A DNA stretch of 64,000 nt from Asterias rubens (taxonomy: Eukaryota), in the NCBI RefSeq assembly GCF_902459465.1, contig NC_047066.1, positions 3,100,001 to 3,164,000 of the forward strand, read 5' to 3'. This document shows positions 12,560 to 62,780 of this stretch, one piece after another (the stretch's first letter is position 1; each line of letters opens with the position of its first letter). Position numbers and translations under genes: made by a program. Under the pieces are notes generated by a model that saw only the letters and a program-made list of their open reading frames with translations, did no database searches and had not been told where the DNA came from.

Positions 12560-35714
<23,155 letters not shown>

Positions 35715-38700
35715 GTAAGCCGGAGAAGAGACAAAAATATTTAATTTGTTTCATTTTTATACAAATACAAATTTTTATTAATTGGTTTATTAAAAACATT
35801 TCCAAAGTCACAGCAAAAAGCCGAATTGTATTTGAATTACAAACATTACAATAAATATGTTAAAAATATATAATTATCAAAAAAAGGCACAAAAGACCTA
35901 CGATAAAAACACCGACCACCAAGAGAAAAAAATTATTATAAGTTTCAACAAAAATAACAACATTGACAGGATGAGAACAATTACGTAAAAATGGGCCAGC
36001 CAAAATTTCTGGTTTTGAAGCCAAGGACTCTCAGGAAAGTGAACTAACATTAATCACTATACTAGTTAAGAAGCCAATGGAGAAAAGACAATGAAGAAGT
36101 TTCAATTTGAGATGTGGGAGGAAAACTTATTCCATAGAAAACCCACGCAGTCAGGTAGGGACTGAATCCGCATTGTGCCCCGGGTGGGATTTGAACCCGG
36201 GTCCCAGAGGTTCTGTGAATGCCTACTCAATTTGCTCACACAACAACATCAAAACCGAGCATAATATACAAATTGTTTATCCACGATGCAAATTTAACAT
36301 CTAACAAAAATTGTTGTTGTCCTTTTTTTGTCAAATCAGGGTTCCATTTGGGCAATTTTATATTCATAAGTAAATGATTATTCAAGAAGCTAAAAAAAAA
36401 TTCTGAAAAGTACTGAAATATTGTGGTCAGGCACAGAATTTTATTTAATATACGGACGTTAAGAGTAAGTTCAGGTAAATAATTGACATATTTGCTCACG
36501 GTGAAAAAATATAGCCCATTGCCATGGTAACAGCTCGTTTTGTTTTTTGGCCATTTTTGGCCAATTTGGGGGTCTGAAAAACTGTTTTTAAGCTCGTGTT
36601 TGTAACTCCACCCCACCAAAATGCAAAATTATTTCATCAACCCTTTTATATCACTACAAAGTATCATCCTTGGCCTTACTTGAGAAAAAAATTATTGCTT
36701 TAAATTTCACCCTTGTGCTATTTTGCATGGCACATTTTTACCCTATTTTTGGACCCCAAAATATCAACTTGCCAGGGGTCTCAGAAATTTTTTCTTTCGA
36801 CTGTGATTAGGGCCAACATTCGTCTTTTCATATCTGGAGAGAAAAATTTGAGCAATTGTATCCTATGGCGACAGTACTGCCTCAAAAAATTATTTTTAAG
36901 TTTTTCCCTCAGTTTTAACTAACAACATAAAAAAGAACTTTTCTACCAATCCGGCACCTTTTCCTAAGTAATCTGTAGGCATGTGGATTACCCAACATTA
37001 ATCTGGAATTTGTGATGATTGGCCCCCCCCCCCCCCAAAAAAAAAAAACCGCATGTGTCACATTAAAAATCACATATTTTAAATTTCACGTTTTTATACA
37101 AGTGCTTTTTAAAAAAGGAAACCAATAGTTTTGTAAATCTTAACATACTGTTTATTCAGAACCAGAACCAACCAGTTCCCTCTGAACAGATTCAGCTTTC
37201 TCAAAAAACAGCACTGTATTTAATTGCTTTCAAGTGGAATATTTTTAGTGTTGTGAACAGCACCCCCATTGGTGATAGTCAAACATTAAATTTGGGGATT
37301 CCCCTCGCACAGTTTCCAGCCCAAAATTAATGAATACAATTATTTTTACCTTAAATGTACCTTCATGTTTGATTCCCACTGCAATTAGAGAAGTCGCAAA
37401 GAGCATTATTTACAAGTTAACCGATACAGTCGTCCCCTTGGTCCCCTGCATATCGCCCAATGTAAACCTTTTTATCCCCATCAAACGAAAACAAACTCTA
37501 AAAGTAAGCAATTCCCAATCAGGGACTGGGGTTCATTATAATTGCATTGTAATTGTAATTAATAAAATGCAGTAGGTTAATTTAACATTGTTGACCTGCA
37601 AAGTGGGCTGTATCCAGTTTCAACACAGGACTGCTCATACTGCTGATTAATTCTTTGTGGAATCAACATTCGAATGACATTAGGAACCTTCAAACTTTCT
37701 CCTGTAGAAAGGTTCAGTACCTTTTCTCCAAAAGGCAAATCTTGAACCACATGCCCCCCAGTGATGAAAGTCAGAAAATGGTCCACTTGTGACATATCAA
37801 GCTTCATTCTTGATGTATGACTTAAAATCACGTTGACACCTCTTCCTTGTTCCTTAGCATGCTTTTTGCTAGTGCAACTTTCCACCTTGATAGTCCTGGG
37901 ATCGATTTCTGTAACTGTTTTATTGTTAATTTGTCTGCCATGATGGATAAAATCTGCCGCCTTGTATCCCATGTAATTGCATTGTTCTAGTATTCAACCA
38001 ATGCATCAATAACTTCTGATTGAACTTCATCCTTGCTTAAGCCAACATACAGGTTCATAATTTGTGTCTTTTGGAGATCATTCCACATACAATCTGCTTC
38101 ACCTGGTGCTAGGGTATTTAAAACCGCCCAACGGCTTCACCTGCTTGTTTTAGGTGGTATCTTTTTGTTGAGGGTCTTGTATCATGCCAAGGATTCTTGA
38201 GAATGTGTGGTTTCTCAATACCAAAAGAATCCAGAAAGTTAAACAATAGCTTTTGATGTATGTGAGATGCTTCACGACTGTTTAGTTCAGACTCACTTGA
38301 ACTACTGCTGAAAGGAGGTATATACCCAGGAGTCTCAGGCACATGTTCACCTTCTTGAGATAATCCACAATCAAGTTCCTTCAACTCTTCACTGTCTGGG
38401 CGTTCCTCTCCTTGTTGTAATCAAAACGAAATTGTGCCTTTACTACTACAGATAATGATTTATTAGCAAAATAGTGGCAGTATTAACCATGACGATCAAT
38501 ACAAGTTTGGGAAGACTCTAACCACATAGGTAGCTAGAACACATGGGAATCCTATTAAAATATCTGTGACGCAACTTACCCAATGCATGAGGGCACACGA
38601 CAAGCTGCGGGCTATAAAAGCCGTGAGCGCAACAGTCTCAGTCTCCCACTCAGTAAGTTCATAGTCAGTTCGTCGTATAGTTGGTGTATTCAGCACGTGC

Positions 38701-41487
38701 TAGGAGTATAATTAGGTAGGCTAGGGCGGGGCATACGGCATGCTGCACGGTGGGTGAAGTCGGGCTGGGCGCTGGTCACCGGGTGTCAGGAGGCTACTGG
38801 AGGCGCAGCTACGGATTGCTGTAGGTAGTGCGACGGGACGGAGCCGGGGAGCGCGCGTCGATGCACCAGCCGCCTCTACAAGGGAGATCCGAGGACTCAG
38901 AGCCGTAGAGGGCGGGCATCTAGGGAGGCGCACTATCACGCAATTGAGGCGTACGGCACAACAGACACCCGGAGGCCAAGTCCAGCCAGGCATTACCCCC
39001 ACCGACAGCATTGCCTCGTATTGACGAACAGGAGGCTAATGTGATTATAGGGATTACATTAATAATTAGGGAGGCTAGTCAATATGGGTCCAGTTAATAC
39101 AAGAGTGATTACACAATAAATAGTTGGAACACTGATATCTGTCTCGTGCGTCTTATATAATTGTCTGTCCTTGTCTGTCCCAGAAGGCGGAGGCGCGGAT
39201 GAGTGCAGCTACGCGTATAGGCGGTATATTTCATCCAAAACGGATCTACCTTTCTTGACCGCTCGATTGGTAAGGGACCAGTTCCGCCACAAATTGTGTC
39301 GGGAGTGGGATTATACGCCTTATACACTTGCCCACGTTCTCACTTCTGGGAGGCTTGGAAAGGCAAGGACCATATCAGGACGCCTCAAATTAATTTAATA
39401 AAAATAATGTCAGGGTCTACTGGGGGTTGATGTGTGTATGTAGCTACAACACCGGGGTGAGGATTACTCCTTCATTCACACGCAGTAATAATCACTCAGG
39501 AAAGAAAATGGAGTCTATACAGTCCAACTGATGATTGTTGATTGTCTTATGATAGTTTAATCAAACCCAATTAAATCCACACAGCAAAGGTACAGAGAGA
39601 CAATAAATTTAGTTTGTTTTACAATAATCAAACTCACTTTTGTTGCAGTTAAAAATAATATTAATATAATCAATTAACTCTGGACTTACCAGACACCTGG
39701 GATTTAGGCACTAGCTCTCCTAACCGACCATGTCTATAAGGCGTCCCACGCCACAATCTGGGCTGTAATAAATACACATACTCATACAGTCACGCATGGT
39801 GAATAGATAGCCCTACAGGTGCACAGTGAAACTCATCCACTTACAAATAATGAGCATTGTTTATAGCCACAAACAACAGATTTATACAATGAAATGTAAA
39901 ACTAATATTAACTCACCAGAATCCACGAATGAAATTGGGTTGGATAACCACTCCCAGATATATGTTCTTCAATCCAACCGCGAAAGCGGTGGAAACTTTT
40001 CATGCCGTATTTAGATTGTCTCAAGGGGTCTTGTATAATCTTCCAACAATGGCGATCCTCCAATGCCACTTGCATTGGTCATAGCGTATAGGCAACGTTA
40101 GCCCTAGTGCAGAAACAAATCACTACACGTGCAAAAGAAAATACATTTGTAGACTCATCAGAGAGTTAATAAAATACCCAATGACGACCTAATTAAATAT
40201 TAAATGATAAATTTTAAATCCCACATTACTATTAATGTGAATTTTAAAGACAAACTAAAAGAACCAATTATATAAGACATACTACATTAAGCAATGTAAG
40301 TACATACAATGCGGAAAACAAAGTGGCTTGCCGCGTTAACGGGGCTTTGAGTAGTGAAAGTTGCCAGACCCCGACAATAATAAAGACTGAGACTAACAAT
40401 GACGAACCAGACTGTCCAGGAACTTCAGGAAGAGATTGACAGCCTCCGTGTAGACCTCAAGGAAGAGAGGATGAACTTAGGTGTTCAATGGAGGAGGGTA
40501 CACGCCAGGAGGCAAAGATGGAACAGTCTGACAAAATATCCCGGCTAGAGGACTCATGGAGGCGCTCCAGTCGCCAGGAGGCTTCATTTGGTTCTGGCTT
40601 GGACACTAGAGTTACCTACACTGCAAAGGTACAGGGAACAGCGCCGGAGGTCACAGGAGGTGATTGGACACCTCCGAGGAGTATTTTGAAGAGGAAAATA
40701 AATTGGATGCCACAGGCACAATCCACTGCTATCACGGGAGACACAACACCCCCTATGGAGGCTTTCGAGGAGTCGCCGAAGCCCGTTGAACCAATTAGGG
40801 AACGAGAGGAGAACGAGGACTTGGACCATGACACACATACCACCAGGGCATGAGGCAGTCATACCGGGGAGAATGGATAAATCATTTGACTCGTATCATG
40901 TCGGAGTAATAGAACCAGTTGAAGGAGGAGGGGTGGTGGCTGACAAGGGCCTTATAATTGTGAGATTGCTAGTGAACATGGACGGCGGGACACTGCCGCT
41001 GCGTGTGCTGAACCCAGGACGACGGAAGTGTGTCCTTCGATGTGGGGTGACCGCAGGCCACCTCACGCCAGTTGAGGAAGGAGATGTAGAGGAGGCAACA
41101 GAGGGAGCAGCGGAGAGAGGGTCAAATGATGTGCGGGTCCCAGGACATCTTTGGAAGCGCAGCGTGGAGGGGATAGATGTACGCTACCATTATACAGTTG
41201 CAGGGCTGTTGTCAGAATTCTCGGATGTATTTTCTGAGGGAGAAAAGGACTTAGGAAAAACTGACTGGGTGAAACACACAATAGACACCGGCAGTGCTAA
41301 ACCAGTGAAGGAGAGGCCTCGGCAACAGCCTCCATGTAACCAAAAGGAGATAGATCGACAGGTGGACGACTTGTTACAAAGAGGCGTTATAGAGCCAGCG
41401 GACAGTCCATGGGCCTCCTGTTCGGAAGAAGGACGGCACCCAGCGGTTCTGCGTACATTATAGAAGACTCAACGAGAGGACAATTAA

Positions 41488-41905
41488 AGGATTCGGGTAC
41501 TTTTTCAAAATGTCCACAGAATTATATTAAACTTACAGGGTTTGAAGATAATGATAGTTGAAAGCTTCCCTTCAAATATTACTAACTAAGGTTGTGTAGT
41601 TTTTGAGAAATGAGTAAAACAAGTCACAAAATAGTTTTGGTCTCATGAGACCAAAACTATTTTAGCATGTAAGATCCCCTTAACCAGTTATGATATTATA
41701 CCAAAACCATGCATAACTGGTTAATACGATTTTACATGCTAAAACTGAGACGAAAATGATTACTTTTACTCATTTCTCAAAAACTACAGCACCTCAGTAA
41801 GTAAAATTTCAAGGGAAGCTTTCTACTATCATAATCTTCAAACTGTAAGTTTAATGTAAATCTGTGGACATTGTGTTTTTTGTTAGGAAAAAGTACATAG
41901 ACCCT
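41488..41905. mobile_element. MITE with TTAA TSD (Kolobok-like AGG...CCT ends) inside the Gypsy RT
   Basis: TTAA at 41484-87 and 41906-09. Removing it restores ACA ATT AAG GAT GCC TAC (TIKDAY). Confidence 0.85.
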
Positions 41906-42962
41906 TTAAGGATGCCTACCCCGTCCCCCAAATTGACGATACCCTTGACGCCCTAGCCGGTGCAAGATGGTTTTCGACCCTTGATCTTGCATCCGGCTAT
42001 TGGCAAGTCGAACTGGACGACGAAGCCCGTAAAGAGTCTGCTTATGTGGTGCACGGAAGGTTGTACAGTTGGAGAGTTATGCCCTTCAGCTTGTGCAATG
42101 CCCCCGCCAAATTTGAGAGGCTCATGGAGAGGATAGTGCGCGGACTCCAGTGGGAAACATTGCTTGTGTATTTAGATGACGTGATAGTGTATGGGCGAAC
42201 TATTATGGAGGAGATCAGCCACTTGAGGGAGGTACTTCAGAGGTTCCGCGAGGCGGGGCTTAAATTAAAGCCGGGGAAATGTCACCTCGTTCGTCAGTCT
42301 GTCAAGTACCTGGGCCAAGATGCCGAGATGTGTAAGATACTGGGTATTCGAAAGACCCGGACAGTCGCCTAAAACCCGAAGTCTGACGGACCCGTGGAAA
42401 GATACAACAAAACACTCATAAACACTGTGTCAATGATGCTGGACCCCAATCGTAATCAGAGGGACTGGGACCAGCAGCTCCCTTTTGCAACATTTGCTTA
42501 CAGGTCGCTACCACAAGAGTCTACAGGAGAGACCCCAAACATGCTTATGTTGGGCCGAGAAGTAATGCTCCCAGTTGACCTCACTACTGAAGAGCCTCTT
42601 CCTGACGAGGCTATGGAACCAAAGACAGACTATGGGGAGGAACTGCGCAGGAGAATGCAAAGAGCCCATGAACGAGCCAGAGAACAAACGAGGACTAGCG
42701 CTAGACGGCAGAAGTTGTCCTACGACAGGAAAGTTGAGGGGACAATGTAGGTGAGTTCATTTGGCTATACAACCCAGCAAAAAAAAGGGAGTGTGCCCTA
42801 AGTTAGTTTCGAGATGGGAAGGGCCGGACCTGATAATAAAGAAGCTTTTTGATGTGAACTACAGGATTCAGAGTAAACCAGAGGGAAAATGCTTGTAGTC
42901 CATTTCGATAGAATGAAACCCTACGAAGGCCCTCACATGGATGCTTGGCATACGGAAAGGTA

Positions 42963-43629
42963 TTACAAGGGTTACTGAAACTAGGGCTAGTGAACTTTTT
43001 TTTCAAACTAGTTATTTGTTTGTGAGGTTGGTTTCATTGGAAAGGCCGTCAGAAAGTAACACAAATGGTGGTAAGATGGTCACAATTGACCAATGCACTC
43101 CGAAGTTATGGCCAAATACATGACGCTCAAAATTATGCTAATTTGCATAGGAAATGCGTAAAAAAATTGTCATTTTCTTTGAAATTGAATAAAAAGGCAT
43201 ATTCAAACACCTGCTACAATGTGAATAAACATTTAATTCAACCAAAACTTGTTGATTTCATTGTTACACAGAAATATTATTGATTCCAGTTGCTACACCA
43301 TATTTGCTACACCATATTTGCACAAAATTTTGATCACACATGGAATGAGTGAAGTTACACAATTTAAGGCATTTTTTCAAAAACTTACATTTAAGCAAAT
43401 TTTTACAAAAAACTGACATTATTTTTAGCTTATTAATATGCAAAAATGTCATAATTCCAATTCCGAATGCCCAGTTTTGACGAAATTTGAAACAAAGATC
43501 ATTTGGGTTATAAAGAAAGAAAGATAATTTGGATTTAAGAATAGAAGATATTGAAAAATTCCTTATTTTTTGTGTTTTGGGTTTTTTAATTGTGTTTCTG
43601 GTGCAAAATCTCATTAGTACGCATTGTAA
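42963..43629. mobile_element. MITE with TA TSD inside the Gypsy integrase 3' region
   Basis: TA-TTACAA...TTGTAA-TA ends; AT-rich with internal inverted segments; interrupts the pol frame. Confidence 0.6.
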
Positions 43630-44303
43630 TAAACACGGGCCTGTCGCCTGCCATACTCCATCTATTAGTGTGTGGTGAGCTATTGGTTACCTGTGGAAAT
43701 AATCCATCGCAAGCGTTATGTTTGTTGAACTCGATGATAAAATGAGGCTTTTCAAACAGCAAAAAAAGTGTGATTTCAACGTCAATCTCAATCAGAGTTT
43801 AAATATAATGTAAGTTTATAACATGAATCAACTATTTTCCAAAATTCTGTGGAATCTTTTTAACATTTTAATCTTAAACGAGGAATGATAAATCTGACTT
43901 TTTAAAACTAAAAATCTTTGTTCTGTGGCTTTTTCTACATAAAGTGGAACCAGTTTCAACCACCATGTGCGCGAGCTCTACTGAAACTCTGATTCAGATA
44001 TATCAAGGGCAGTCACTGGAACAGCAGAATCACCAGAGAGGAGCCGAGGCGACAATACCGGGCATAGATGTTGATTAGGACGTTTGGATCGAACCAATGC
44101 TTGACATGGGAGGTTATGACAATGACGTGATTACTGAGACAGTACAGGATATAGAAGATATTCCTGTAACTCATGGTCGAAGGAACCCCCTCAGAGAGAG
44201 GAAGCTACCTCTCCGTTTCCGTTAGGGAACAATTGTACATTATCGGATCCCTTATACTAACCTCTGCTATAAATTTTAATGTTTATTTTTCAGACTGGAA
44301 ATC

Positions 44304-45158
44304 ATGAAAGAGCAAGAAAGGAGAATGTTCAGCTGCCCTGAATGCCCCAATACGTTCCAGCACAAGATCAGCCTCATGAGACATAGACAAGTGGACCATG
44401 GCATAGAGTTGTATGTTTGGTGCGAAGGGTGCGACTTCAGAAGTGCAAGGAAAGACAACCTAAGAAGGCCCTATCGCCAGAACCACAAGGAACACATCCA
44501 CGAGGTAGATGTGGTGCCCCTTGAGACAGAGAGAGAACGGGCACAGAGGCGACGCTTGGACGGTGGGGAGGAGACAAAGGAGACAAGAAGAGTGATGGTG
44601 AGCAGGGGCCTGGAGAAAGCGGAAACATGGGCGAAGGCACGGGATACCATCAAGGAGAACCAGGCCACCAGCAAGCAACAACGGGGCGAGAAGCGTCCAC
44701 GGGGAAACACGGATGAGCAGCAGACACCCAAGTGCAAGATTGGTAAAGGTGATGGAGGCGCCACTCGAGGTCCTCTTGACCTATCGGTGCCTCGACCGGA
44801 GGTATCCCTATCACCAGCCTCAGTGTCTCTGCTGGACGAGGACGTACCAGCCCCCGTACTTGAGCCACTACGAGGAAAGCCCAGTGGGAGTAGAGGAGAT
44901 GACGCGAAGGAGGATAGCAGTGAGGATGAGGAGGGAGTACTGCCACCAGAGGAGCCAGCCGAGGCAAGGGCCGTGAACAACGAGGGAGCAGCAGAGCACA
45001 GGGAGGACCTGCAACCCATCCCTCAGGTGCCTCTTGCTGAAATCCTCAGAGGCAGAGTGAGCCGCGTGTCTGAGGTTTCTTCCACATTTGACTACCAAGA
45101 GGGGGTGAAGGTTCGCGAGTATCAGTTGCTCAGGGTTTACGACGTGCGGTTCGACTAG
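44304..45158 (+). CDS. 284-aa C2H2 zinc-finger protein: accessory ORF of the Gypsy element
   Basis: CPECPNTFQHKISLMRHRQVDH (canonical C2H2) and CEGCDFRSARKDNLRRPYRQNH (second finger, first His replaced by Pro). Preceded by branch point TACTAAC (44255-61) and acceptor tttattttttcag (ends 44293). Lies between pol and the PPT/3' LTR. Confidence 0.75.
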   Translation: MKEQERRMFSCPECPNTFQHKISLMRHRQVDHGIELYVWCEGCDFRSARKDNLRRPYRQNHKEHIHEVDVVPLETERERAQRRRLDGGEETKETRRVMVSRGLEKAETWAKARDTIKENQATSKQQRGEKRPRGNTDEQQTPKCKIGKGDGGATRGPLDLSVPRPEVSLSPASVSLLDEDVPAPVLEPLRGKPSGSRGDDAKEDSSEDEEGVLPPEEPAEARAVNNEGAAEHREDLQPIPQVPLAEILRGRVSRVSEVSSTFDYQEGVKVREYQLLRVYDVRFD

Positions 45159-48100
45159 GACTTCCGTAGGAAGTAGTTTTGATGAGAGGCGCATGTATAA
45201 AGAGGCGCCAGAGGAGTTGATGACCCTGTTGAAGTTGAATAAAGTTATTGGTTTTCAATAAGTTGCTTGGATTCTTAGGTCTTTATGAACGGGGGCGTTC
45301 ATGCTAAGAAGGAGGCTTTGTGACGTAACTTACCCAACGAATGAGGGCACACTCCTAGCTGCGGGCTATAAAAGCCATGAGCGCAACAGTCGGGTCTCTC
45401 AGTCTCCCACTCAGTCAGTTCGTCGTATAGTTGGTGTATTCAGCACGTGCAAGGAGTATAATTAGGTAGGCACGGGCGGGGCAGACGGCATGCTGCACAG
45501 TGGGTGAAGTAGGTAGCGCGACGGAACGGAGCCGGGGAGCACGCATCGATGCACCGGCCGCCTCTACGAGGGAGATCCGAGGACTCAGAGCCGTAGAGGG
45601 CGGGCATCTAGGGAGGCGCACTATCACGCAATTGAGGCGTACGGCACGACGGACACCCGGAGGCTAAGCCCAGCCAGGCATTACCCCACCGGCAGCATTG
45701 CCTCTCATTGACGAACAGGAGGCTAATGTGATTATAGGGATTACATTAATAATTAGGGAGGCTAATCAATATGGGTCCAGTTAATACAAGAGTGATTACA
45801 CAATAAATAGTTGGAACACTGATATCTGTCTCGTGCGTCTTATATAATTGTCTGTCCTTGTCTGTCCCAGAAGGCGGAGGCGCGGGTGAGTGCAGCTACG
45901 CGTATAGGCGGTATATATTTCATCCAAAACGGACCTACCTTTCTCGACCGCTCGATTGGTAAGGGACCATTTCCGCCACATATCTTGCCAGTTTCAAAGC
46001 TGCAAAATCTCTGCAGTTGTTGCACATGCCTGAGACATTCCATGTTGACCTTGAAGAATTCTTTTACCCTCAAGTTTTGCCCTACAGCTTTTGCAAATGG
46101 CTACAAATTCAGTTAAATGAGGGGATTATATCATGTGAAACAAAAACAAATTGTTTTTAAAATTAGCTAGAAATTGTGGTATGACAGTCAGGTTTTATTT
46201 ATACCTGCACCCACTGGAATGAGAACCCGCACGGTTTCCATGGTCTTCTTTGACTGGAAGAAACCAACAGCCCTGTCACCAATCGGAGGGATTTTTTTCG
46301 TAGAACTGTGACCTGCAACTTCTGATGGCACCTGGGGCCGATTTCACTAAACTCTGTTTTGCGATCATCGCTAAATTGAACGCAAGCGCGACGCAAACCA
46401 CAAAATCCATCGCAGTTGCGACGGGCTGCATTTTTGATTTCACTAAGGTATTTTTGCGACGGATTTGATTTACGATGGATTTAAATAAATACCTTTACCT
46501 TGAACGAGGCTGTCGCAAGATTATTTGACCTTTGACCATCTTCGGTGACACCATCAGGCTAGTCAGCGCGGCAGTTTTTGACAACTAAAAAGTCGGCCGT
46601 CAGTTTTCGAGAAAACACATAAGTATTTTTTAATATTATGACAAGTTGCATTCTCTTAACAATCTTACAAGTTCGCAATATGTGTTTTTTTCCGATGGTT
46701 TACTAGTGCTTGTAAACTTAGACTTCATCAGTGTTCAGTAAATAAGGTTTTTTTTTACGATCGACTCGTCGCTTCACGTCTTTCTGTACTGTGCATGCGG
46801 TGTGTGTATGGATCGTACGATGTACAAACATACATGTTTATGTGCATGATTGTACCATGGAGGATAAATTTATTCCTCCATGGTTGTACATAGTGAACTA
46901 AATAAAGACAACGTTACATGTATTGAAATGTAAGCAAATGTACGTATGTACTGTGATGTGTACATGGCATATTATTGTTGTACATGTAGGTACTACTTAC
47001 TAAAAAACAAGCAAGTGTACCGGTAATAATTCCGTGCATTTATTTTACATGTTCGTTGGGGTTGCCCAACAAGGCAAGTTGGGATTGTTGTAATTATTTG
47101 CTTTCATTACAACTGGCATTCTACTATTTGAAACCTAGTCTACAGAAAATTGTAACTGGCAGACTTGACTGGGAAGATTTATGTTTCAATTTACCTTCAA
47201 ACAAGTTCAAGTTCATGAATCATGCCACCACTTTTTCACCCCTTTTTTACAATTATTAAAACTTAAGGTAAGTTTTAGATAGAAAGATGTTTATTTTATT
47301 CCATCACGAATGAAAAAGTAGTGGCAAGATACAGAAACATTTCCTTTTATTCTTGTCCACGTTCAAAATGTACACATTACTAACTAGCCTAGCGAAACCT
47401 ATATTTTAATAGGACCCCAGTGGGAGGGGGGGGGGGGGGGTGCATAGCTGTCCACATGACATGGCTTTGTCATGTGAGTCGGATTTGTTTGCCTAAAAAG
47501 ACCCAACCTGTGTCCAAAATGTATGCAGATTGATATGGTCTGCCGAATAATGAATGGTCACCCATTTATGGGAAAAAGATGCACCATGGACAGGAAATAT
47601 TAATATTCGCTTACATAACATTTACAAACAATTCCATGCACTGTCTGTATATTACCCAATATTCATAAATACCCCAGACATTTTCTCTACTCCTATTGGT
47701 GGAGAGCGCGTCACTGGGTGTGCATAAACCTTTTTTTAATGCACACACTGGAGCTCTGTTTATGCACACTGAGCTGGCTTCAAATTTTTAATTGTTAAAG
47801 TGTCTATAACTGTATTTGTTTACGTTTTGTTAACAAAAGGGCATTTATGAATGGGAATAACAGAGTAGTGACTCGTTCTTCAACGTCAGTTTAAAACCTT
47901 GCAGGATCATTGCCGTGCAATAAAGGCCCTCGCATTCAGCTCGGGCCTTTATCACACGGCCGCCGACCCTGCCGGCTTTAAACGTACATTGAAGAACCCG
48001 TCGCTACCCTTTTATTCCTTTAAAATAATTCAACTTTATGCGTACGAGTTTCCCAGCTGAGCATACACGAGGCGAAGTTTTACCACAAAAGAGAGGCCCA

Positions 48101-54016: not shown

Positions 54017-54452
54017 ATTAAGATTGTCTATTTTCAACAGTGATAAATTAAAACTGAATTAAACTGAACTTTTCACTCACCGACTGATTTACTTGTTTGA
54101 TTATTTTTTAGTACAGTGTTATTGTTATATTTTTTTACAAATTAGGCCTAGTAAAAAAAAATACCAGCCGATCACCCGGATTTTTCCAAAAGAGGATGAG
54201 GGCCTTTTTATTTTTTTATAGTGGGGCTGCGAAACAATTTGAATAAGACTGACCACAATTTCTTCTGTTTAAAGTCACCACTTGTAAAATAACATAAAAG
54301 AAATGACACAGCCTCAAAAAAGGATGAAGCCGGGGACGATCAACTGGTATTAATTTTGTTTTTGCCTTGTGCACCACACTAAATCACATTGCAACCAATA
54401 ATGCCAAGTGCTAACTCAATATGTAAAACTATACTCAAAAAAATAATATTAT

Positions 54453-54571
54453 TTGAAAGCCTCTCAGCCTTTGAAAACTTATCAAATATATTTCCATACA
54501 ACTATAAATAATAATTGAAAGCCTCTCAGCCTTTGAAAACTTATCAAATATATTTCCATACAACTATAAAT
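54453..54571 (+). repeat. 57-bp direct duplication with a 5-bp spacer, inside the Harbinger
   Basis: ttgaaagcctctcagcctttgaaaacttatcaaatatatttccatacaactataaat x2. Confidence 0.9.
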
Positions 54572-55056: not shown

Positions 55057-57035
55057 ATGGACGGCCAAGAGGTACCACCGGCAAAGAAAGCAATGAAAGA
55101 AATGGTAATTAAACGCAGTATCCCGAGTGTGGCAGTATTGTATTGCTCATTATTTTTGCAAACCTGTGTGTCGTGTCACATACCCAGGATTTCCCATCCT
55201 CCTAAGTTGGACCTTCAGTATTCTGTCCCCTCTAGCACCTAAAGCACACACTTTTCCTTGCTCTATGCTTTGATACTTTAAATGCAATCAAAAAAATATA
55301 AACCGGGAATGATGGGATTTTTATTATTTTTTTCTTTTCGGGGGGGGGGGGGGGGGGGGCGGACAGCAGAGGCTCCTGCCACACCCACTACCGAACTAAT
55401 CATCGTTTTTGGGTTTACATTTGATTTCATTTATTTCTTATACATTTTGCAGTCTCAGAAGACACCTCGATGGCAGGAGTTTGAGAGTAAAGCTCTGTCC
55501 TTATTTTGTCGTGACAGCCAGGCAGCCCTGTTTGGTTCTGGTGGCGGTGCAGGGGTGGAATCAACAAAGAGAAAATCCTGGCAAGCTGCCACTGAACAGG
55601 TTCGAGCTGCTGGAGGAATGGTCAGGGACTGGCAAACCACCCGCAAAAAATGGCAAGATTTATGCTACAGGGCAAAGGTGTACAAAAATAAGCGAGATGG
55701 AAAGGGAGTTACGGGTATGTGGTATTAATTTTGGTTGACTATTATATTTTCAAAGCATGTTGGGCGAATTTGTAAAGTAACATTTTCCTTTGCCAAAAGA
55801 TCACATGTGTCACACTTTTTTTTTTTTTTAAGCTATTGTTATTGATCAGTCTGCATTCATTAAAGCAAAGGGTGAGGCAAATATTTATACACTGACTTCA
55901 AGTGGCCGCAACTTTCAAAATTAAGTATCGACTTGAGAAAATCAAACGAGAGCATAAAGTGCAATTACTTTGCTATGTATGGTGCAGCATTTTAAGTGTC
56001 AGGTGCCGGGCCTAGTTCCTATATGCTGTAAATTGTTTTGTTTTTTTGTAGTCATTCAATAATTGATCTATCTATCGATTGTATTAAGGTGGAGGACCAC
56101 AGCCACATGCAAACCCTTTACACGAGCTCGTGCTAGATTGCATGCCAGACGAAGTTGTCGACGGAGTGATGCCGAATGGGGCATGTGAAACAATTCCCCA
56201 GGTAAAACTTAAGACATAATAATGAGGACAGTTTATAACTCTTAAAGTTACTCGATAAATCACTGTTTCAATCAACGATTCTCGGCAGCTATGTGCATTG
56301 GACCATATATACCATTAATTCAAAATGGGGTGGTTAATAATCTGTCCGTGCCTATGGGAAACATGGGTGAGTGGTCTAGAGGGTAAAGTGATGACACGAC
56401 GATAGCACGTCACATAATCATTTCCATGAGGACATGACTTTGACAACTCTACCAAAACCTATAGTTGTTATCCATTTAACAGAATGTGTTTATCTTGGAT
56501 TTCTTTTTGGCTTATTATTTCCAGCTTGCACCACCAACGCAAGAACATAATCGCCCCTCAACGAGTGGCATTATGTCATCACGGCCCCTAAAACGAACTT
56601 GCGAAACAGAAACGGAAACGGAAACTAAAACCGATGTAAGTTGCATTAGCAACAGTTCAGAAGTGACATTAATTTTGCTGAAATTTGTTTGACAAACAAT
56701 ACCAAACATGATGTGTTTATATTTCTGATGTATACTTTCAGTCCCAACCACAGGAGGTTCTACCCACTCCAACCCTAAAGAAACACCCCAAGAAACACAA
56801 CCAGCCAAAGAAGAAGACAGGCAAAAAGAAGGGGCCCGGCAACAAGGAGGTTGATCTTTTAGGCATGAACAGGGAAGTTGTTTCTTTGACAAAAGAAAAA
56901 ATGCTACTCAAGAGACAGTCCCTCGAGTATCAGAAGGAGACCATCGAGGTCCTGCGGGAGATCAATGCGACCCTGCAGAGAGCATTCCCCAGCAGCTCCG
57001 CTGTCGCTTTGTTTAATTCCATGTCAGAGCAATAA
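55057..57035 (+). CDS. Harbinger Myb/SANT-like (trihelix) DNA-binding protein, 5 exons, 275 aa, intact
   Basis: Exons 55057-55104, 55453-55714, 56089-56201, 56525-56635 and 56742-57035 are phase-compatible. Sequence PRWQEFESKAL...KRKSWQAATEQV...RDWQTTRKKWQDL, then TGGGP..., a basic KKK stretch and a C-terminal coiled coil, the layout of Harbinger second proteins. Confidence 0.85.
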
Positions 57036-58254: not shown

Positions 58255-60545
58255 CTAAAAGAAAGTGTTAACCATCCTAGCTCTTGCGGCGTTTCCAAGG
58301 TGGACGTCTGGGCCTTGGTCATCGTTGTCTGCGATGTCAATAATCTCAAGTTGCCTCTGTCGTCCCAGATACGGCTCGTTGAGTATCTTGGAGATGTTGA
58401 AAAGGACGGCACAGGCAACGATGACTTTGCAGGCTTTTTCGGGGGCCACACGTAACCCCTTTCGCAGACATGGGAATTTCATTTTGATTTGCCCATTCGT
58501 CTGCTCAATGACGACTCTGCCATGACGATGAGCACTGCAAATTAGACATTTCAGGGAGTAAAAGTATAACAAACTTTTAGTCTTTTTTAAGGGGAAAACT
58601 ACCTCCACACTGCTTTTTTCAAGAAGGCCTTAACAAGAAACGTATATAGTCTGCTGCAACGAAAACGTAGGCCTAAGTACCCCATGGAAGCAGAGGCCTA
58701 TTATTCCACCCGGCATTTTGATTGTTTTTTGTTGTCACGTTACGGTTTAAGGACGGGTTGATCAACTCATTCCCACTGACATGACGTTGAAAATAGGCCT
58801 AAAAATCCCATAAAATCTTAGGACTTACTCGTTGTAGTTTCGTTCTCTGGCAGTTGCTGGTTGCCAGAAGGGGGTCATCAGCCACTCCAGTTGCGGGTAG
58901 CCGGAGTCTCCCAGGAGAATGCCCTGAAGATCTCCTCTTCTGAACATCTGGGCAATTTCGCTGCGGGTGAGGATCCGGCTGTCGTGAACTGACCCAGGCC
59001 AGTTCGCGACAACGTTGTTGATTCTATAGCTGGTGTCACATATCAGCTGGACATTTAGGCTGTGTACACCCTTCCTATTTACATATGTAAATTCGTTTTG
59101 TCCTAGTGGGCAGGCGTCGAGGGGAACGTGTGTGCAATCCACTGCACCAACCACCCCCGGGAACCCACAGAGGTTGTGGAACCCCCACTGGGTTTTTGCA
59201 ACATCCGCTGCTGCTGCAGGCCATTTAATATAATCGACTCTCATCCTCACCAAGATATCAGTCACTCTGTAGACGATCCTACATACACTTGCTTCGGAGA
59301 TCCCATGGTGAGCAGAAGTTGTCGAGTAGAAACACCCCGTTGCGTAAAAGCGAAGTGCGACGAACACTTGCACATTTGCCGGGATCGCATGGCTCCGTTG
59401 CGTTTCGGGCTGTAAAAATGGCTCTAAGATGTCTATCACCCGCATCACCTAGGGCCACTGATTTTCCGTTTCAGAAAAGTGCAAATTCCGTTTGGCAAAA
59501 ACATGAATTCCGTTTCAGGCACAAAAAATTCCGTTTCATGTTTTTTTAATTAGATAAAAGGTTGTTTAATACCCAGTGACACACTTATAAAAACCAATTT
59601 GAGATAAGTTGCACTGTTGACTTCGTAAAATGTTCATTTGAACTGACAAATTTCAAAAAAATACTTTTTTTTATAATATTGTGGATTATTTTGTATACTG
59701 CTGTTCTAAAAAGGTTGCACTGTGACTGCAGTATCAATGCACATGATGTGATAGACTTGATTCAAAGTCTAAAACTGCAGTTGATTCTCTGCATCAGCCA
59801 CATTGTAGGCTAATGACAGGAGTGTATCCACAAGAGGGCGCTGTTTCAGCATGATCAAAGACTTGGGAACAAGTCTATGGACGTGACCATTCTCCATCCA
59901 CAAACAAAATGTCAGCCATTTTGTTTTCGCTTTGGCGACAGAATGTTGACAGTTTACGGTTTTATTTTAGACCTTTCCGAGATGAAAAAACATTGTATGT
60001 GTTCTTATAGATCATAGGTAAGCTAGTTTGTGTATTATTGTTGGTAAAAGAGAGGGAGAAAATGCTATTTGGGTGAACAAAAAATGTTTAAAACGTGCCG
60101 CGAATAATGCCCTTCGCTTAACCATGTTAACAACGTGTGTACATCATGTGTGTAAACATTGAGGATGGTGTGAAGTAGAACAGAATGATCCACGGTTACG
60201 ATCTCGTACTTTTTGATGGTCTGATTTCTGATGCCTTTTTAGTTTAACAAAAAGAATCTTAATAAAGAATGCAATTTCAATAGTTTTGGCGTCAAGAAAA
60301 AAAAAAAAAAATAATCAAATTTTCTGAAATCCCGTTTTCCGTTTCAAAGGGCGGATTCCGCGAATTCCGTCCGTTTTCCGCGATCGCGGAAAATCAGTGG
60401 CCCTAATCACCCCATTTCTCGTAAACCGATAATACTTATGCATCCTTTTGTCGTTGTAGTCATCTAGAGGATTCGTTCTGTCTCGGAAAATCCGTTCTCT
60501 TTGGAGAACACGAGCATTGTTAACATACAGCAGATGCAACGCCAT
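58255..60545 (-). pseudogene. Harbinger (HARBI1-like, DDE_Tnp_4) transposase, 344 aa once the MITE is removed
   Basis: Pieces 60545-60406 + 59443-58829 (exon 1) and 58534-58255 (exon 2). Catalytic motifs GAVDCTHV, WPGSVHDSRIL, LLGDSGYP and VIEQTNG. The only lesion seen is the MITE at 59450-60405. Confidence 0.9.
59450..60405. mobile_element. 956-bp non-autonomous TIR element (hAT-like TAGGG ends) inside the Harbinger transposase
   Basis: 19-bp TIRs TAGGGCCACTGATTTTCCG; 6-bp TSD ATCACC (59444-49, 60406-11); no ORF. Confidence 0.85.
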
Positions 60546-62697: not shown

Positions 62698-62780
62698 ATG
62701 GCTTACCAGCAGTCCCCAAGCAAACGGCCCGCTTCCTCGTCTCGGGCTGCTGGGGTTTCGGTGAGGGCTCAGCCCGTTAG
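62698..62780 (+). CDS. BCAS3: Duplicated BCAS3 exon 1 (start of a second BCAS3 copy running out of the window)
   Basis: MAYQQSPSKRPASSSRAAGVSVRAQPV-AG|gtgaga. Same 83-nt length and donor as 12560-12642, with one amino-acid change (G>A). Confidence 0.8.

What the first reader, a model, noticed from the sequence alone, without database searches (positions are those of the whole stretch)
44255..45158. Gypsy retrotransposon carries a splice-ready C2H2 zinc-finger ORF in the env position
Seen: between the pol stop and the PPT/3' LTR is a 284-aa open frame with a canonical C2H2 finger and a second finger with H>P. These are followed by a basic/acidic linker and an ordered-looking C-terminus (VPLAEILRGRVSRV...VYDVRFD). 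A perfect branch point TACTAAC, a pyrimidine tract and CAG precede it. Known: env of errantiviruses and retroviruses is expressed from a spliced subgenomic RNA at this position; classical C2H2 fingers are not a standard Gypsy component (gag has CCHC, integrase HHCC). Inference: an accessory DNA-binding regulator, possibly acting on its own LTR or on host silencing, or a captured host ZF exon. It stays open while gag and pol are broken.
Basis: partly seen in the sequence, partly recalled or inferred. Interest (0 to 1): 0.78.

Follow-up and report, generated by a model that had tools for sequence, protein, structure and literature searches.

The report
Sea-star Gypsy element's zinc-finger accessory gene
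A decayed Gypsy retrotransposon in the starfish Asterias rubens carries, where retroviruses keep env, a conserved two-zinc-finger gene with its own splice acceptor; the same gene is found in related elements of other sea stars and appears to have been turned into host genes.

Summary
A 284-aa ORF (44304-45158) lies between the pol stop and the PPT/3' LTR of a 7.4-kb LTR-bounded Ty3/Gypsy copy (38565-45980, 4-bp target duplication). The window is Asterias rubens.

The ORF is neither chance nor a one-off capture. Homologous ORF3s occupy the same position in seven other Gypsy loci. The named ones are from Patiria miniata (one copy looks intact) and Acanthaster planci; the rest are marine metagenome contigs. 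dN/dS is about 0.18-0.29, against 0.10-0.13 for pol and gag.

Seven of eight loci keep a branch-like motif, a pyrimidine tract and YAG 0-19 nt before the ATG. NCBI's model XP_033627026.1 joins a BCAS3-like exon (donor at 35714) to exactly this acceptor (44294).

The protein has a tandem C2H2 pair, a basic helix, a disordered middle with short motifs (including a CtBP-type PLDLS) and a C-terminal beta-hairpin. No env features were seen.

Two asteroid host genes carry the whole ORF3-like unit in one large terminal exon, which suggests repeated exon-trap domestication.

Function is inferred: a spliced, nucleic-acid-binding regulator. The window copy is itself decaying, so its staying open is not significant. 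I found no prior description.

The parts
38561..38564 (+). Target-site duplication, left copy (TATC); right copy at 45981-45984
   Evidence: Flank comparison. Relatives also have 4-bp duplications (ATAT in L001, GTAC in L005).
38565..39291 (+). 5' LTR (TG...CA), with TATA-like box 38612-38618 and AATAAA 39115-39120
   Evidence: Identity to the 3' LTR is 95.6% over 473 nt and 87% over 196 nt, with indels.
39292..39312 (+). Primer-binding-site region, degenerate here; L001 and L005 share an 18-nt TGG-initiated PBS
   Evidence: The priming tRNA was not identified.
40399..40820 (+). gag remnant (broken gene; homologous only to about the first third of the Patiria gag)
   Evidence: tblastn with L001 gag gave 2 HSPs covering query 1-142 of 462 at 59% identity.
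40831..44225 (+). pol remnant (broken gene; RT-RNase H-integrase part, protease end missing), ending at TAG 44223-44225
   Evidence: tblastn with L001 pol gave 5 HSPs covering query 143-1278 at 73.6% identity, with 6 in-frame stops and at least 3 frame changes. Domain order in L001 is from Pfam.
44255..44293 (+). Putative 3' splice site of ORF3: branch-point motif 44255-44261, pyrimidine tract, CAG 44291-44293
   Evidence: The same arrangement occurs in 7 of 8 related loci. It is used as acceptor in XP_033627026.1.
44304..45158 (+). ORF3, 284 aa: accessory C2H2 protein
44328..44489 (+). Tandem C2H2 finger pair (residues 9-62), with canonical 7-residue inter-finger spacing
   Evidence: Pfam. 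The PDB profile search hits only two-finger DNA binders at positions 7-62. AlphaFold2 pLDDT is above 90. Foldseek.
44772..44786 (+). PLDLS motif (residues 157-161), CtBP-binding type
   Evidence: P[LI]DL[ST] occurs in 6 of 24 family proteins against 0.03 expected from shuffles, at a similar position in four sub-lineages.
45021..45155 (+). C-terminal conserved domain (about the last 45-60 residues), predicted as a long beta-hairpin
   Evidence: Alignments. AlphaFold2 on the Patiria orthologue gives strands 261-282 and 285-306 with pLDDT 73-90. No Pfam or PDB relative was found.
45306..45316 (+). Polypurine tract
   Evidence: An identical tract lies in front of the L001 3' LTR.
45319..45980 (+). 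3' LTR, with AATAAA 45802-45807 and a consensus-like 5' splice donor candidate (G|GTGAGT) at 45885
35518..35714 (+). Last BCAS3-like exon of XP_033627026.1; donor AG|GTAAGC after 35714 is joined to 44294 in that model

Best explanation
The ORF is ORF3 of a sea-star lineage of Ty3/Gypsy retrotransposons. It is an accessory, non-envelope gene that was already present in the common ancestor of several divergent sub-lineages and has been kept by selection.

Shown:
- Its position between pol and the PPT.
- Its conservation, with dN/dS well below 1.
- Its domain layout: two classical C2H2 fingers, a basic helix, a disordered middle with short conserved motifs, and a C-terminal beta-hairpin.
- A conserved 3' splice site just upstream of its own ATG.

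Inferred:
- It is translated from a subgenomic mRNA spliced from a donor in U5 of the 5' LTR to that acceptor, removing the PBS, gag and pol.
- The protein acts in the nucleus as a sequence-specific nucleic-acid-binding adaptor, most likely on DNA.
- The finger pair docks on a short site, plausibly in the element's own LTR or at chromatin near it.
- The disordered region recruits host factors. The PLDLS motif points to the corepressor CtBP. The hairpin mediates self-association or partner binding.

Because ORF3 brings its own acceptor and the LTR brings a poly(A) signal, sense-oriented insertions can trap upstream host exons. The window shows such a chimera (BCAS3-like::ORF3). Two conserved asteroid genes look like old, fixed versions of the same event. 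The window copy itself is a dead element.
For: Element anatomy.

Homologues in the same position:
- L001, Patiria: all three ORFs open, LTRs 100% identical over 823 bp.
- L002, L003, L004, L005.
- L007, L009.

ORF3 identity tracks pol identity across lineages: 55/74, 44/71, 36/60, 36/58 and 32/46 %.

dN/dS: ORF3 0.17-0.29; pol 0.10-0.12; gag 0.13.

Acceptor:
- A strict-criteria site lies 0-19 nt before the ATG in 5 of 6 loci, where such sites occur at only 0.15-0.6 per kb.
- Looser matches occur in L004 and L007.
- The AG-to-ATG distance is not in a constant phase, so the ORF's own ATG is used.
- Two NCBI gene models start an exon exactly there.

Donor candidate: it lies in a homologous U5 block in four or five lineages.

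Protein.

Host genes with the whole ORF3-like unit in one terminal exon.
Against: - No transcript data were available, so splicing is inferred from sequence and from gene models that may be partly ab initio. The A. planci model's introns bridge assembly gaps.
- One locus (L009, a low-coverage metagenome contig) lacks an AG directly before the called ATG.
- The donor is only a candidate. In the window only one of the two LTR copies keeps the consensus there.
- The PLDLS-type motif is present in only 6 of 24 family proteins and in none of the host homologues.
- Two fingers give little sequence specificity, and C2H2 fingers can also bind RNA or protein.
- Nothing identifies the target.
- Three insertion sites show no common target sequence.
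- Only asteroid species are named among the hosts. The metagenome contigs are of unknown origin.
Confidence: 0.6

Rival explanations
1. The protein is an RNA-binding factor for the element's own transcripts. It would act like Cer1 CERV or retroviral Rev in exporting or stabilising unspliced genomic RNA, or as a nucleic-acid chaperone like the C2H2 peptide of L1Tc, rather than as a DNA-binding regulator.
For: An element that splices needs a way to export its unspliced RNA. CERV is encoded by a spliced mRNA from the same position in a Gypsy/Ty3 element (PMC10309623). C2H2 motifs in L1Tc have chaperone activity (PMC2805920). The basic helix after the fingers and the acidic serine cluster are compatible with this role.
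Against: The best sequence and fold matches are all double-stranded-DNA-binding two-finger units with canonical linker length. No export-signal-like motif was identified. No Caenorhabditis protein came back from the profile searches. The host homologues multiply the finger pairs threefold, which is typical of DNA-binding factors.
Confidence: 0.2
2. ORF3 is a host exon that an ancestral element captured. The direction would be host to element, and the two asteroid genes would be the source rather than derivatives.
For: Host genes share both the finger module and the C-terminal domain in the same order. ORF3 is more GC-rich than the rest of the element.
Against: At least three different 5' partners carry the same ORF3-like unit, always as one large terminal exon: UBX7_N-type exons, an unrelated N-terminus in LOC119740576, and BCAS3-like in the window. 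An intronic acceptor would not travel with a captured mRNA, yet the elements have one. The host-gene architecture was seen only in asteroids among the top 150 hits from a library of 1.8 billion representatives. ORF3 divergence tracks pol divergence.
Confidence: 0.2
3. The protein guides integration. The fingers would tether the pre-integration complex to particular DNA, as the N-terminal fingers of R2 do for that non-LTR element.
For: R2 uses N-terminal C2H2 fingers for target recognition (PMC10499050). An R2 structure appears among the weak fold matches. One relative sits inside a 219-bp satellite array.
Against: Three insertions have unrelated 4-bp duplications and unrelated contexts: a BCAS3-like gene region, a unique region and a satellite. 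ORF3 is a separate protein with no detected link to integrase.
Confidence: 0.1
4. The ORF in this window is simply the last exon of the host BCAS3-like gene, as annotated by NCBI, and has nothing to do with the retrotransposon. Alternatively, it is a chance open frame in purine-rich DNA.
For: XP_033627026.1 includes it as its terminal exon. Long antisense ORFs (182, 108 and 105 aa) in the same stretch show that stops are rare there by composition.
Against: It lies inside an LTR-bounded, duplication-flanked element between the pol stop and the PPT. Homologues lie in the same place in elements at unrelated loci in other species and are under purifying selection. BCAS3 family domains end before it.
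Confidence: 0.03

Closest known systems
CERV of Cer1 (Gypsy/Ty3 element of C. elegans), PMC10309623
   Same: [quoted passage not shown] It is lineage-specific and acts in the nucleus on the element's own expression.
   Different: The profile searches returned no Caenorhabditis protein, so no sequence relation was detected. CERV is not described as a C2H2 protein, and its mRNA fuses upstream coding sequence to the ORF, whereas ORF3 here uses its own ATG. I fetched no comparator sequence.
env of errantiviruses and other env-carrying Ty3/Gypsy elements
   Same: It occupies the same genomic position and follows the same logic of a subgenomic spliced message.
   Different: ORF3 has no match to any envelope family. 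By inspection of the translation the protein is hydrophilic throughout, with no signal peptide and no membrane segment. A recent survey found no env-carrying Gypsy elements in Echinodermata (PMC13524379).
Additional ORFs of LTR retrotransposons (plant aORFs; bdelloid rotifer ORF3s, PMC5408684)
   Same: These are family-specific extra genes after pol, often spliced, of diverse and mostly unknown function.
   Different: The described types are env-like, GDSL esterase, DEDDy exonuclease, coiled-coil or transmembrane proteins, and an m6A demethylase in orchids (PMC9289625). I found no C2H2 type in the searched literature.
C2H2 fingers of non-LTR retroelements (R2 N-terminus, PMC10499050; C2-L1Tc, PMC2805920)
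   Same: They are classical C2H2 fingers used by a retroelement to bind nucleic acid.
   Different: They are part of the RT polyprotein of non-LTR elements, not a separate spliced gene of an LTR element. There is no homology beyond the finger fold.
Asteroid host genes LOC117288205 (A. rubens), LOC119719922 (P. miniata), LOC110977354 (A. planci); and LOC119740576 / LOC110985983
   Same: They share homologous finger-pair modules (34-40% identity), the linker motif and the C-terminal domain (about 50% identity), in the same order.
   Different: They are multi-exon single-locus genes between ordinary host genes. They have unrelated 5' exons, three finger pairs or two C-terminal domains, and no PLDLS motif.
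Viral proteins with a PxDLS motif that recruit CtBP (for example adenovirus E1A; from general knowledge, not tested here)
   Same: A short PLDLS motif lies in a disordered region of a virus-like element's regulatory protein.
   Different: Only the motif is seen. Binding is untested, and the motif is absent from most sub-lineages.

Membership tests
Ty3/Gypsy (Metaviridae) LTR retrotransposon | Direct LTRs ending TG...CA, flanked by a short target-site duplication | tested here: met
   LTRs 38565-39291 and 45319-45980, with the 4-bp duplication TATC.
Ty3/Gypsy (Metaviridae) LTR retrotransposon | pol domain order protease - RT - RNase H - integrase; gag with a CCHC knuckle | tested here: met
   Pfam on the Patiria relative shows this order and one CCHC. 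The window's pol remnant aligns to residues 143-1278 of that pol. The window's gag remnant lacks the knuckle part.
Ty3/Gypsy (Metaviridae) LTR retrotransposon | PBS after the 5' LTR and PPT before the 3' LTR | tested here: met
   The PPT is at 45306-45316 and is identical in L001. The PBS is TGG-initiated in L001 and L005 and degenerate in the window. The tRNA was not identified.
Named Gypsy clade (Mag/SURL, Cer1-like, chromovirus and others) | Placement in an RT/integrase phylogeny with reference elements; for chromoviruses, a chromodomain at the integrase C-terminus | tested here: inconclusive
   Pfam found no chromodomain in the L001 pol. I made no clade phylogeny because reference elements were not fetched.
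Envelope-carrying Gypsy (errantivirus-like) | ORF3 encodes a membrane fusion glycoprotein with signal peptide and transmembrane anchor | tested here: not met
   Only zinc-finger families match. The sequence is hydrophilic throughout. The model has no membrane helix.
Classical C2H2 zinc finger (Pfam PF00096) | CX2-4CX12HX3-5H with a beta-beta-alpha fold, in tandem with a 7-residue linker | tested here: met
   Finger 1 is complete. Finger 2 lacks one ligand in the window and is complete in relatives. The window scores 22.5 bits, below the 25.2 cut-off, while relatives P0009 and P0020 pass it. pLDDT is above 90 and fold matches are to two-finger DNA binders.
CtBP-recruiting proteins | PxDLS motif in a disordered region, and physical binding to CtBP | tested here: inconclusive
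   The motif is present and recurs in four sub-lineages, in a segment with pLDDT below 50. Binding is not testable with these tools.
Spliced subgenomic accessory gene (retrovirus-like expression) | Conserved 3' splice site before the ORF, a 5' donor in the LTR or leader, and junction-spanning transcripts | tested here: inconclusive
   The acceptor is conserved and is used in gene models. There is only a candidate donor. No transcript data were available.
Cer1 CERV family | Sequence homology to CERV | tested here: not met
   No Caenorhabditis or CERV-named protein appeared among the hits of the profile searches. The likeness is functional and positional only.

The most novel reading that the evidence does not exclude
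This Gypsy lineage acts as a natural exon trap. Its accessory gene travels with a strong acceptor and an LTR poly(A) site, and it has repeatedly donated a ready-made DNA-binding terminal exon to host genes. Two such genes have been fixed and conserved across asteroid orders, and a third, nascent one (BCAS3-like::ORF3) is in this window. The domesticated copies, which keep the element's own recognition module multiplied threefold, may now serve the host as repressors of the very family they came from.
Probability: 0.3. Interest if true: 0.8.

Novelty: new variant of a known kind. Interest (0 to 1): 0.62.

Why it matters
Extra genes in LTR retrotransposons are known, but few have an assignable biochemical role, and in animals almost all attention has gone to env.

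This one belongs to a recognisable class (a tandem C2H2 binder with linear motifs). It is conserved over a long time span, has a conserved splice signal, has an apparently intact natural copy in Patiria miniata, and has host-gene derivatives.

That makes three questions directly approachable with existing sea-star genomes and transcriptomes. First, how does an env-less element regulate itself with a transcription-factor-like protein? Second, do elements use the CtBP corepressor route known from DNA viruses? Third, how do element genes with built-in splice sites become host genes?

It also flags an annotation artefact or chimera in the A. rubens BCAS3-like model.

Tried and rejected
- Chance ORF or one-off capture: rejected.
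- Env-like protein: rejected.
- PDB profile search and Foldseek against PDB and viral models gave only generic two-finger matches and nothing for the C-terminal domain.
- The word-based protein search found only two relatives. A second search with a family profile added little. The exhaustive HMMER search was what opened up the family.
- A donor between the PBS and gag: no shared GT donor in the short leaders. One Patiria-only candidate just before the gag ATG was not conserved.
- Identifying the priming tRNA from tRNA genes in the fetched DNA: only one tRNA gene was found, and it matched poorly.
- Target-site preference: three duplications, nothing in common.
- Looking for further BCAS3-like exons downstream of the element by Pfam on the larger ORFs: none found. 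This is inconclusive because exons are short.
- The inverted-repeat tool did not confirm the terminal inverted repeats of the sequence inserted in the leader.
- Literature searches for a C2H2 ORF3 in Gypsy elements or for descriptions of this family found none.
- Clade assignment against reference Gypsy elements was left out because reference elements were not to be fetched.
Full report
**What is there.** The window holds a 7.4-kb LTR retrotransposon on the + strand.
- The LTRs are 38565-39291 and 45319-45980. They end TG...CA. Identity is 95.6% over their 3' two-thirds and 87% over the first 200 nt, with indels.
- A 4-bp duplication (TATC) flanks the element.
- Each LTR has a TATA-like box about 50 nt from its start and an AATAAA about 180 nt before its end.
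- Inside lie a PBS-like region, a gag remnant (40399-40820), a pol remnant (40831-44225), the ORF of the finding (44304-45158, 284 aa) and a polypurine tract (45306-45316).

**State of this copy** (counts only).
- gag and pol share one large deletion that removes most of gag and the protease end of pol.
- The pol remnant has six in-frame stops and at least three frame changes.
- The non-coding leader carries one unrelated insertion of about 1 kb that relatives lack.
- ORF3 has one zinc ligand of finger 2 replaced, and it ends a few codons before its relatives do.

At the decay rate seen in pol, about 2.3 disruptions would be expected in ORF3. Its being open is therefore unremarkable (P about 0.1).

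**Host and neighbourhood.** The protein search returned XP_033627026.1, 'breast carcinoma-amplified sequence 3-like [Asterias rubens]'. It maps to + strand exons from 12560 to 35714, and its last 289 residues map to 44294-45155. The window is therefore A. rubens. The NCBI model joins the donor after 35714 (AG|GTAAGC) to exactly the CAG acceptor in front of ORF3. BCAS3 family domains end before that junction.

**The ORF is a conserved gene of the element family.** The word-based search found two relatives. One is a 298-aa protein at 81% identity on a marine metagenome contig. The other is a 307-aa Patiria miniata protein at 55% identity. The Patiria locus (L001) is a complete element:
- its LTRs are 823 bp and 100% identical;
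- gag is 462 aa with a CCHC knuckle;
- pol is 1278 aa with protease, RT, RNase H and integrase;
- ORF3 follows 80 nt after the pol stop.

The exhaustive profile search and context look-ups added more loci:

| Locus | Source | Context |
|---|---|---|
| L003 | metagenome | LTRs, gag, pol and ORF3 |
| L004 | Acanthaster planci | gag, pol and ORF3 |
| L005 | Patiria | non-autonomous derivative with 99.8% identical LTRs that kept gag and ORF3 but lost most of pol |
| L007 | Patiria | second sub-lineage, LTRs 99.6% identical |
| L009 | metagenome | gag, pol and ORF3 |

ORF3 identity to the Patiria copy falls in step with pol identity: 55/74, 44/71, 36/60, 36/58 and 32/46 %. This fits one old acquisition followed by co-divergence.

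Nei-Gojobori dN/dS for ORF3 is 0.29 (window vs L002), 0.17-0.18 (L001 vs window or L003) and 0.21 (L002 vs L001). For the same pairs pol gives 0.10-0.12 and gag 0.13. ORF3 is thus selected, though it evolves about twice as fast as gag and pol at the protein level.

**Expression signal.**
- In seven of eight loci the ATG is preceded, within 0-19 nt, by YAG, a pyrimidine-rich tract and a yUnAy-type or GTAAC-type motif 25-45 nt further up.
- A strict scan finds such sites at only 0.15-0.6 per kb on the sense strand of these elements. It still finds one in the 25 nt before the ATG in five of six loci.
- The AG-to-ATG distance varies in phase, so ORF3 is read from its own ATG.
- Two independent NCBI models start an exon exactly at this AG. 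The A. planci model's introns bridge assembly gaps and carry less weight.
- For the donor, the short leaders share nothing.
- A homologous U5 block about 95-135 nt before the end of the LTR does carry a GTGAGT- or GTAAGA-type donor in four or five lineages. In the window it is at 45885 in the 3' LTR, and only one of the two LTR copies keeps the consensus.

A U5 donor joined to the ORF3 acceptor would give a message lacking the PBS, gag and pol. This remains an inference. I could not examine any transcript data.

**The protein.**
- Residues 9-62 are a tandem C2H2 pair with canonical spacing. Profile matches in the PDB and fold matches are all two-finger DNA-binding units such as Tramtrack, BCL11A, CTCF, ZBTB7A and SALL4.
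- AlphaFold2 on the Patiria orthologue, with a 20-sequence family alignment, gives pLDDT above 90 for the fingers. Helices follow (63-103), then a disordered middle, then a long C-terminal beta-hairpin (261-306, pLDDT 73-90).
- The family alignment shows conserved islands in the disordered part: an E-V-x-x-I-P-x-E-T motif after the fingers, LSLSPAS-like and GGKPRGM-like motifs, and an acidic serine cluster. Several sub-lineages carry two copies of the C-terminal domain.
- A strict P[LI]DL[ST] motif, the CtBP-binding type, occurs in 6 of 24 family proteins from four sub-lineages at a similar position, against 0.03 expected.
- The translation is hydrophilic throughout with no obvious signal peptide, the model has no membrane helix, and no envelope family matches.

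**Host homologues.** A gene of about 1200 aa is present in P. miniata, A. planci, A. rubens and A. amurensis. It has an N-terminal UBX7_N-type domain, three finger-pair modules and one C-terminal domain homologous to those of ORF3: 34-40% identity for the modules and about 50% for the C-terminal domain. In A. rubens it has five small exons followed by one 2.7-kb terminal coding exon that holds all the ORF3-like parts.

A second gene (P. miniata LOC119740576, A. planci LOC110985983) has three small exons and again one terminal exon with the complete ORF3-like unit. It lies between ordinary host genes.

Together with the BCAS3-like chimera, that makes three different 5' partners for the same terminal unit. 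I read this as element-to-host exonisation through ORF3's own acceptor (about 0.7), rather than capture of a host exon (about 0.2). Among the top 150 profile hits, the hits whose source species I could look up (about two dozen) were all asteroids, except one fish poly-finger protein.

**Mechanism, with its grading.**
- Shown: a conserved, selected accessory gene with a conserved acceptor and a two-finger nucleic-acid-binding fold.
- Inferred, in falling order of confidence: expression from a spliced subgenomic RNA (0.65); a DNA-binding regulator that recruits host factors, perhaps CtBP, to the element's LTR or nearby chromatin (0.4); an RNA export or chaperone role (0.2); integration guidance (0.1).

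**Comparison with what is known.**
- It works most like Cer1 CERV, a non-env spliced nuclear regulator in the env position (PMC10309623), but it is not related to CERV in sequence.
- It belongs to the general class of additional ORFs of LTR retrotransposons (PMC5408684, PMC9289625).
- Env-carrying Gypsy elements were reported absent from echinoderms (PMC13524379).
- I found no description of a C2H2 ORF3 in a Gypsy element, or of this family, in five literature searches. Repbase-type libraries could not be consulted.

Comparisons across broken frames returned only counts and outer bounds.
- For domain mapping, a profile HMM of the three-protein alignment A2 was built in scratch.
- Related loci, including one apparently intact natural copy, were reached only through look-ups of proteins returned for the finding's own ORF. 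They were read as they stand.
- I judged these endogenous copies to be the 'copies' the brief allows me to compare, not a virus fetched as a comparator. A reader who judges otherwise should know that searches did this.
- Possible slip 1: an earlier count gave approximate bounds of the insertion in the leader.
- Possible slip 2: the outer bounds of gag and pol homology imply where the large deletion lies.
- Possible slip 3: the output shows the variant LTR site.
- Assembly gaps (N) in L004 were left as they are.

Noticed in passing
window 12560-35714 (+), plus 44294-45155: These are exons of an A. rubens BCAS3-like gene (WD40 and BCAS3 domains). The NCBI model XP_033627026.1 ends in the retrotransposon's ORF3 instead of a BCAS3 C-terminus. 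It is either a real chimeric transcript or an annotation artefact.
   Followed up: partly
window 62698-62778 (+): A second copy (96% at protein level) of the first coding exon of the BCAS3-like gene lies 50 kb downstream of the first (12560-12640). It may be a tandem or partial gene duplication.
   Followed up: no
window, leader of the element between the PBS region and gag: About 1 kb of AT-rich sequence is absent from the Patiria and metagenome relatives. By eye it has short imperfect inverted ends, which the repeat tool did not confirm. It is unclassified.
   Followed up: partly
window 55282-55728 (+) and 58825-59448 (-): One ORF has a Myb/SANT-like domain (Myb_DNA-bind_5, E=1e-7) and another has a DDE_Tnp_4 transposase domain (E=1e-20). 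These are the two proteins typical of a PIF/Harbinger DNA transposon, and they are probably remnants.
   Followed up: no
L005 111-5633 and 13061-20741: The Patiria non-autonomous relative sits inside a long array of a satellite with a period of about 219 bp.
   Followed up: no
L006 3001-14556 (A. rubens LOC117288205) and L008 9001-12363 (P. miniata LOC119740576): Two conserved asteroid host genes have a single large terminal exon that holds the ORF3-like finger modules and C-terminal domain. They are uncharacterised in the databases.
   Followed up: partly
protein P0031 (Xyrichtys novacula, 1252 aa): A fish protein has seven repeats that match the ORF3 profile beyond the fingers (profile positions 4-150). 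It is unexplained and may be only composition plus finger pairs.
   Followed up: no
window 25292-25394 and 54445-54571: Two short tandem duplications, of 51-bp and 62-bp units with two copies each, lie in intronic or intergenic DNA.
   Followed up: no
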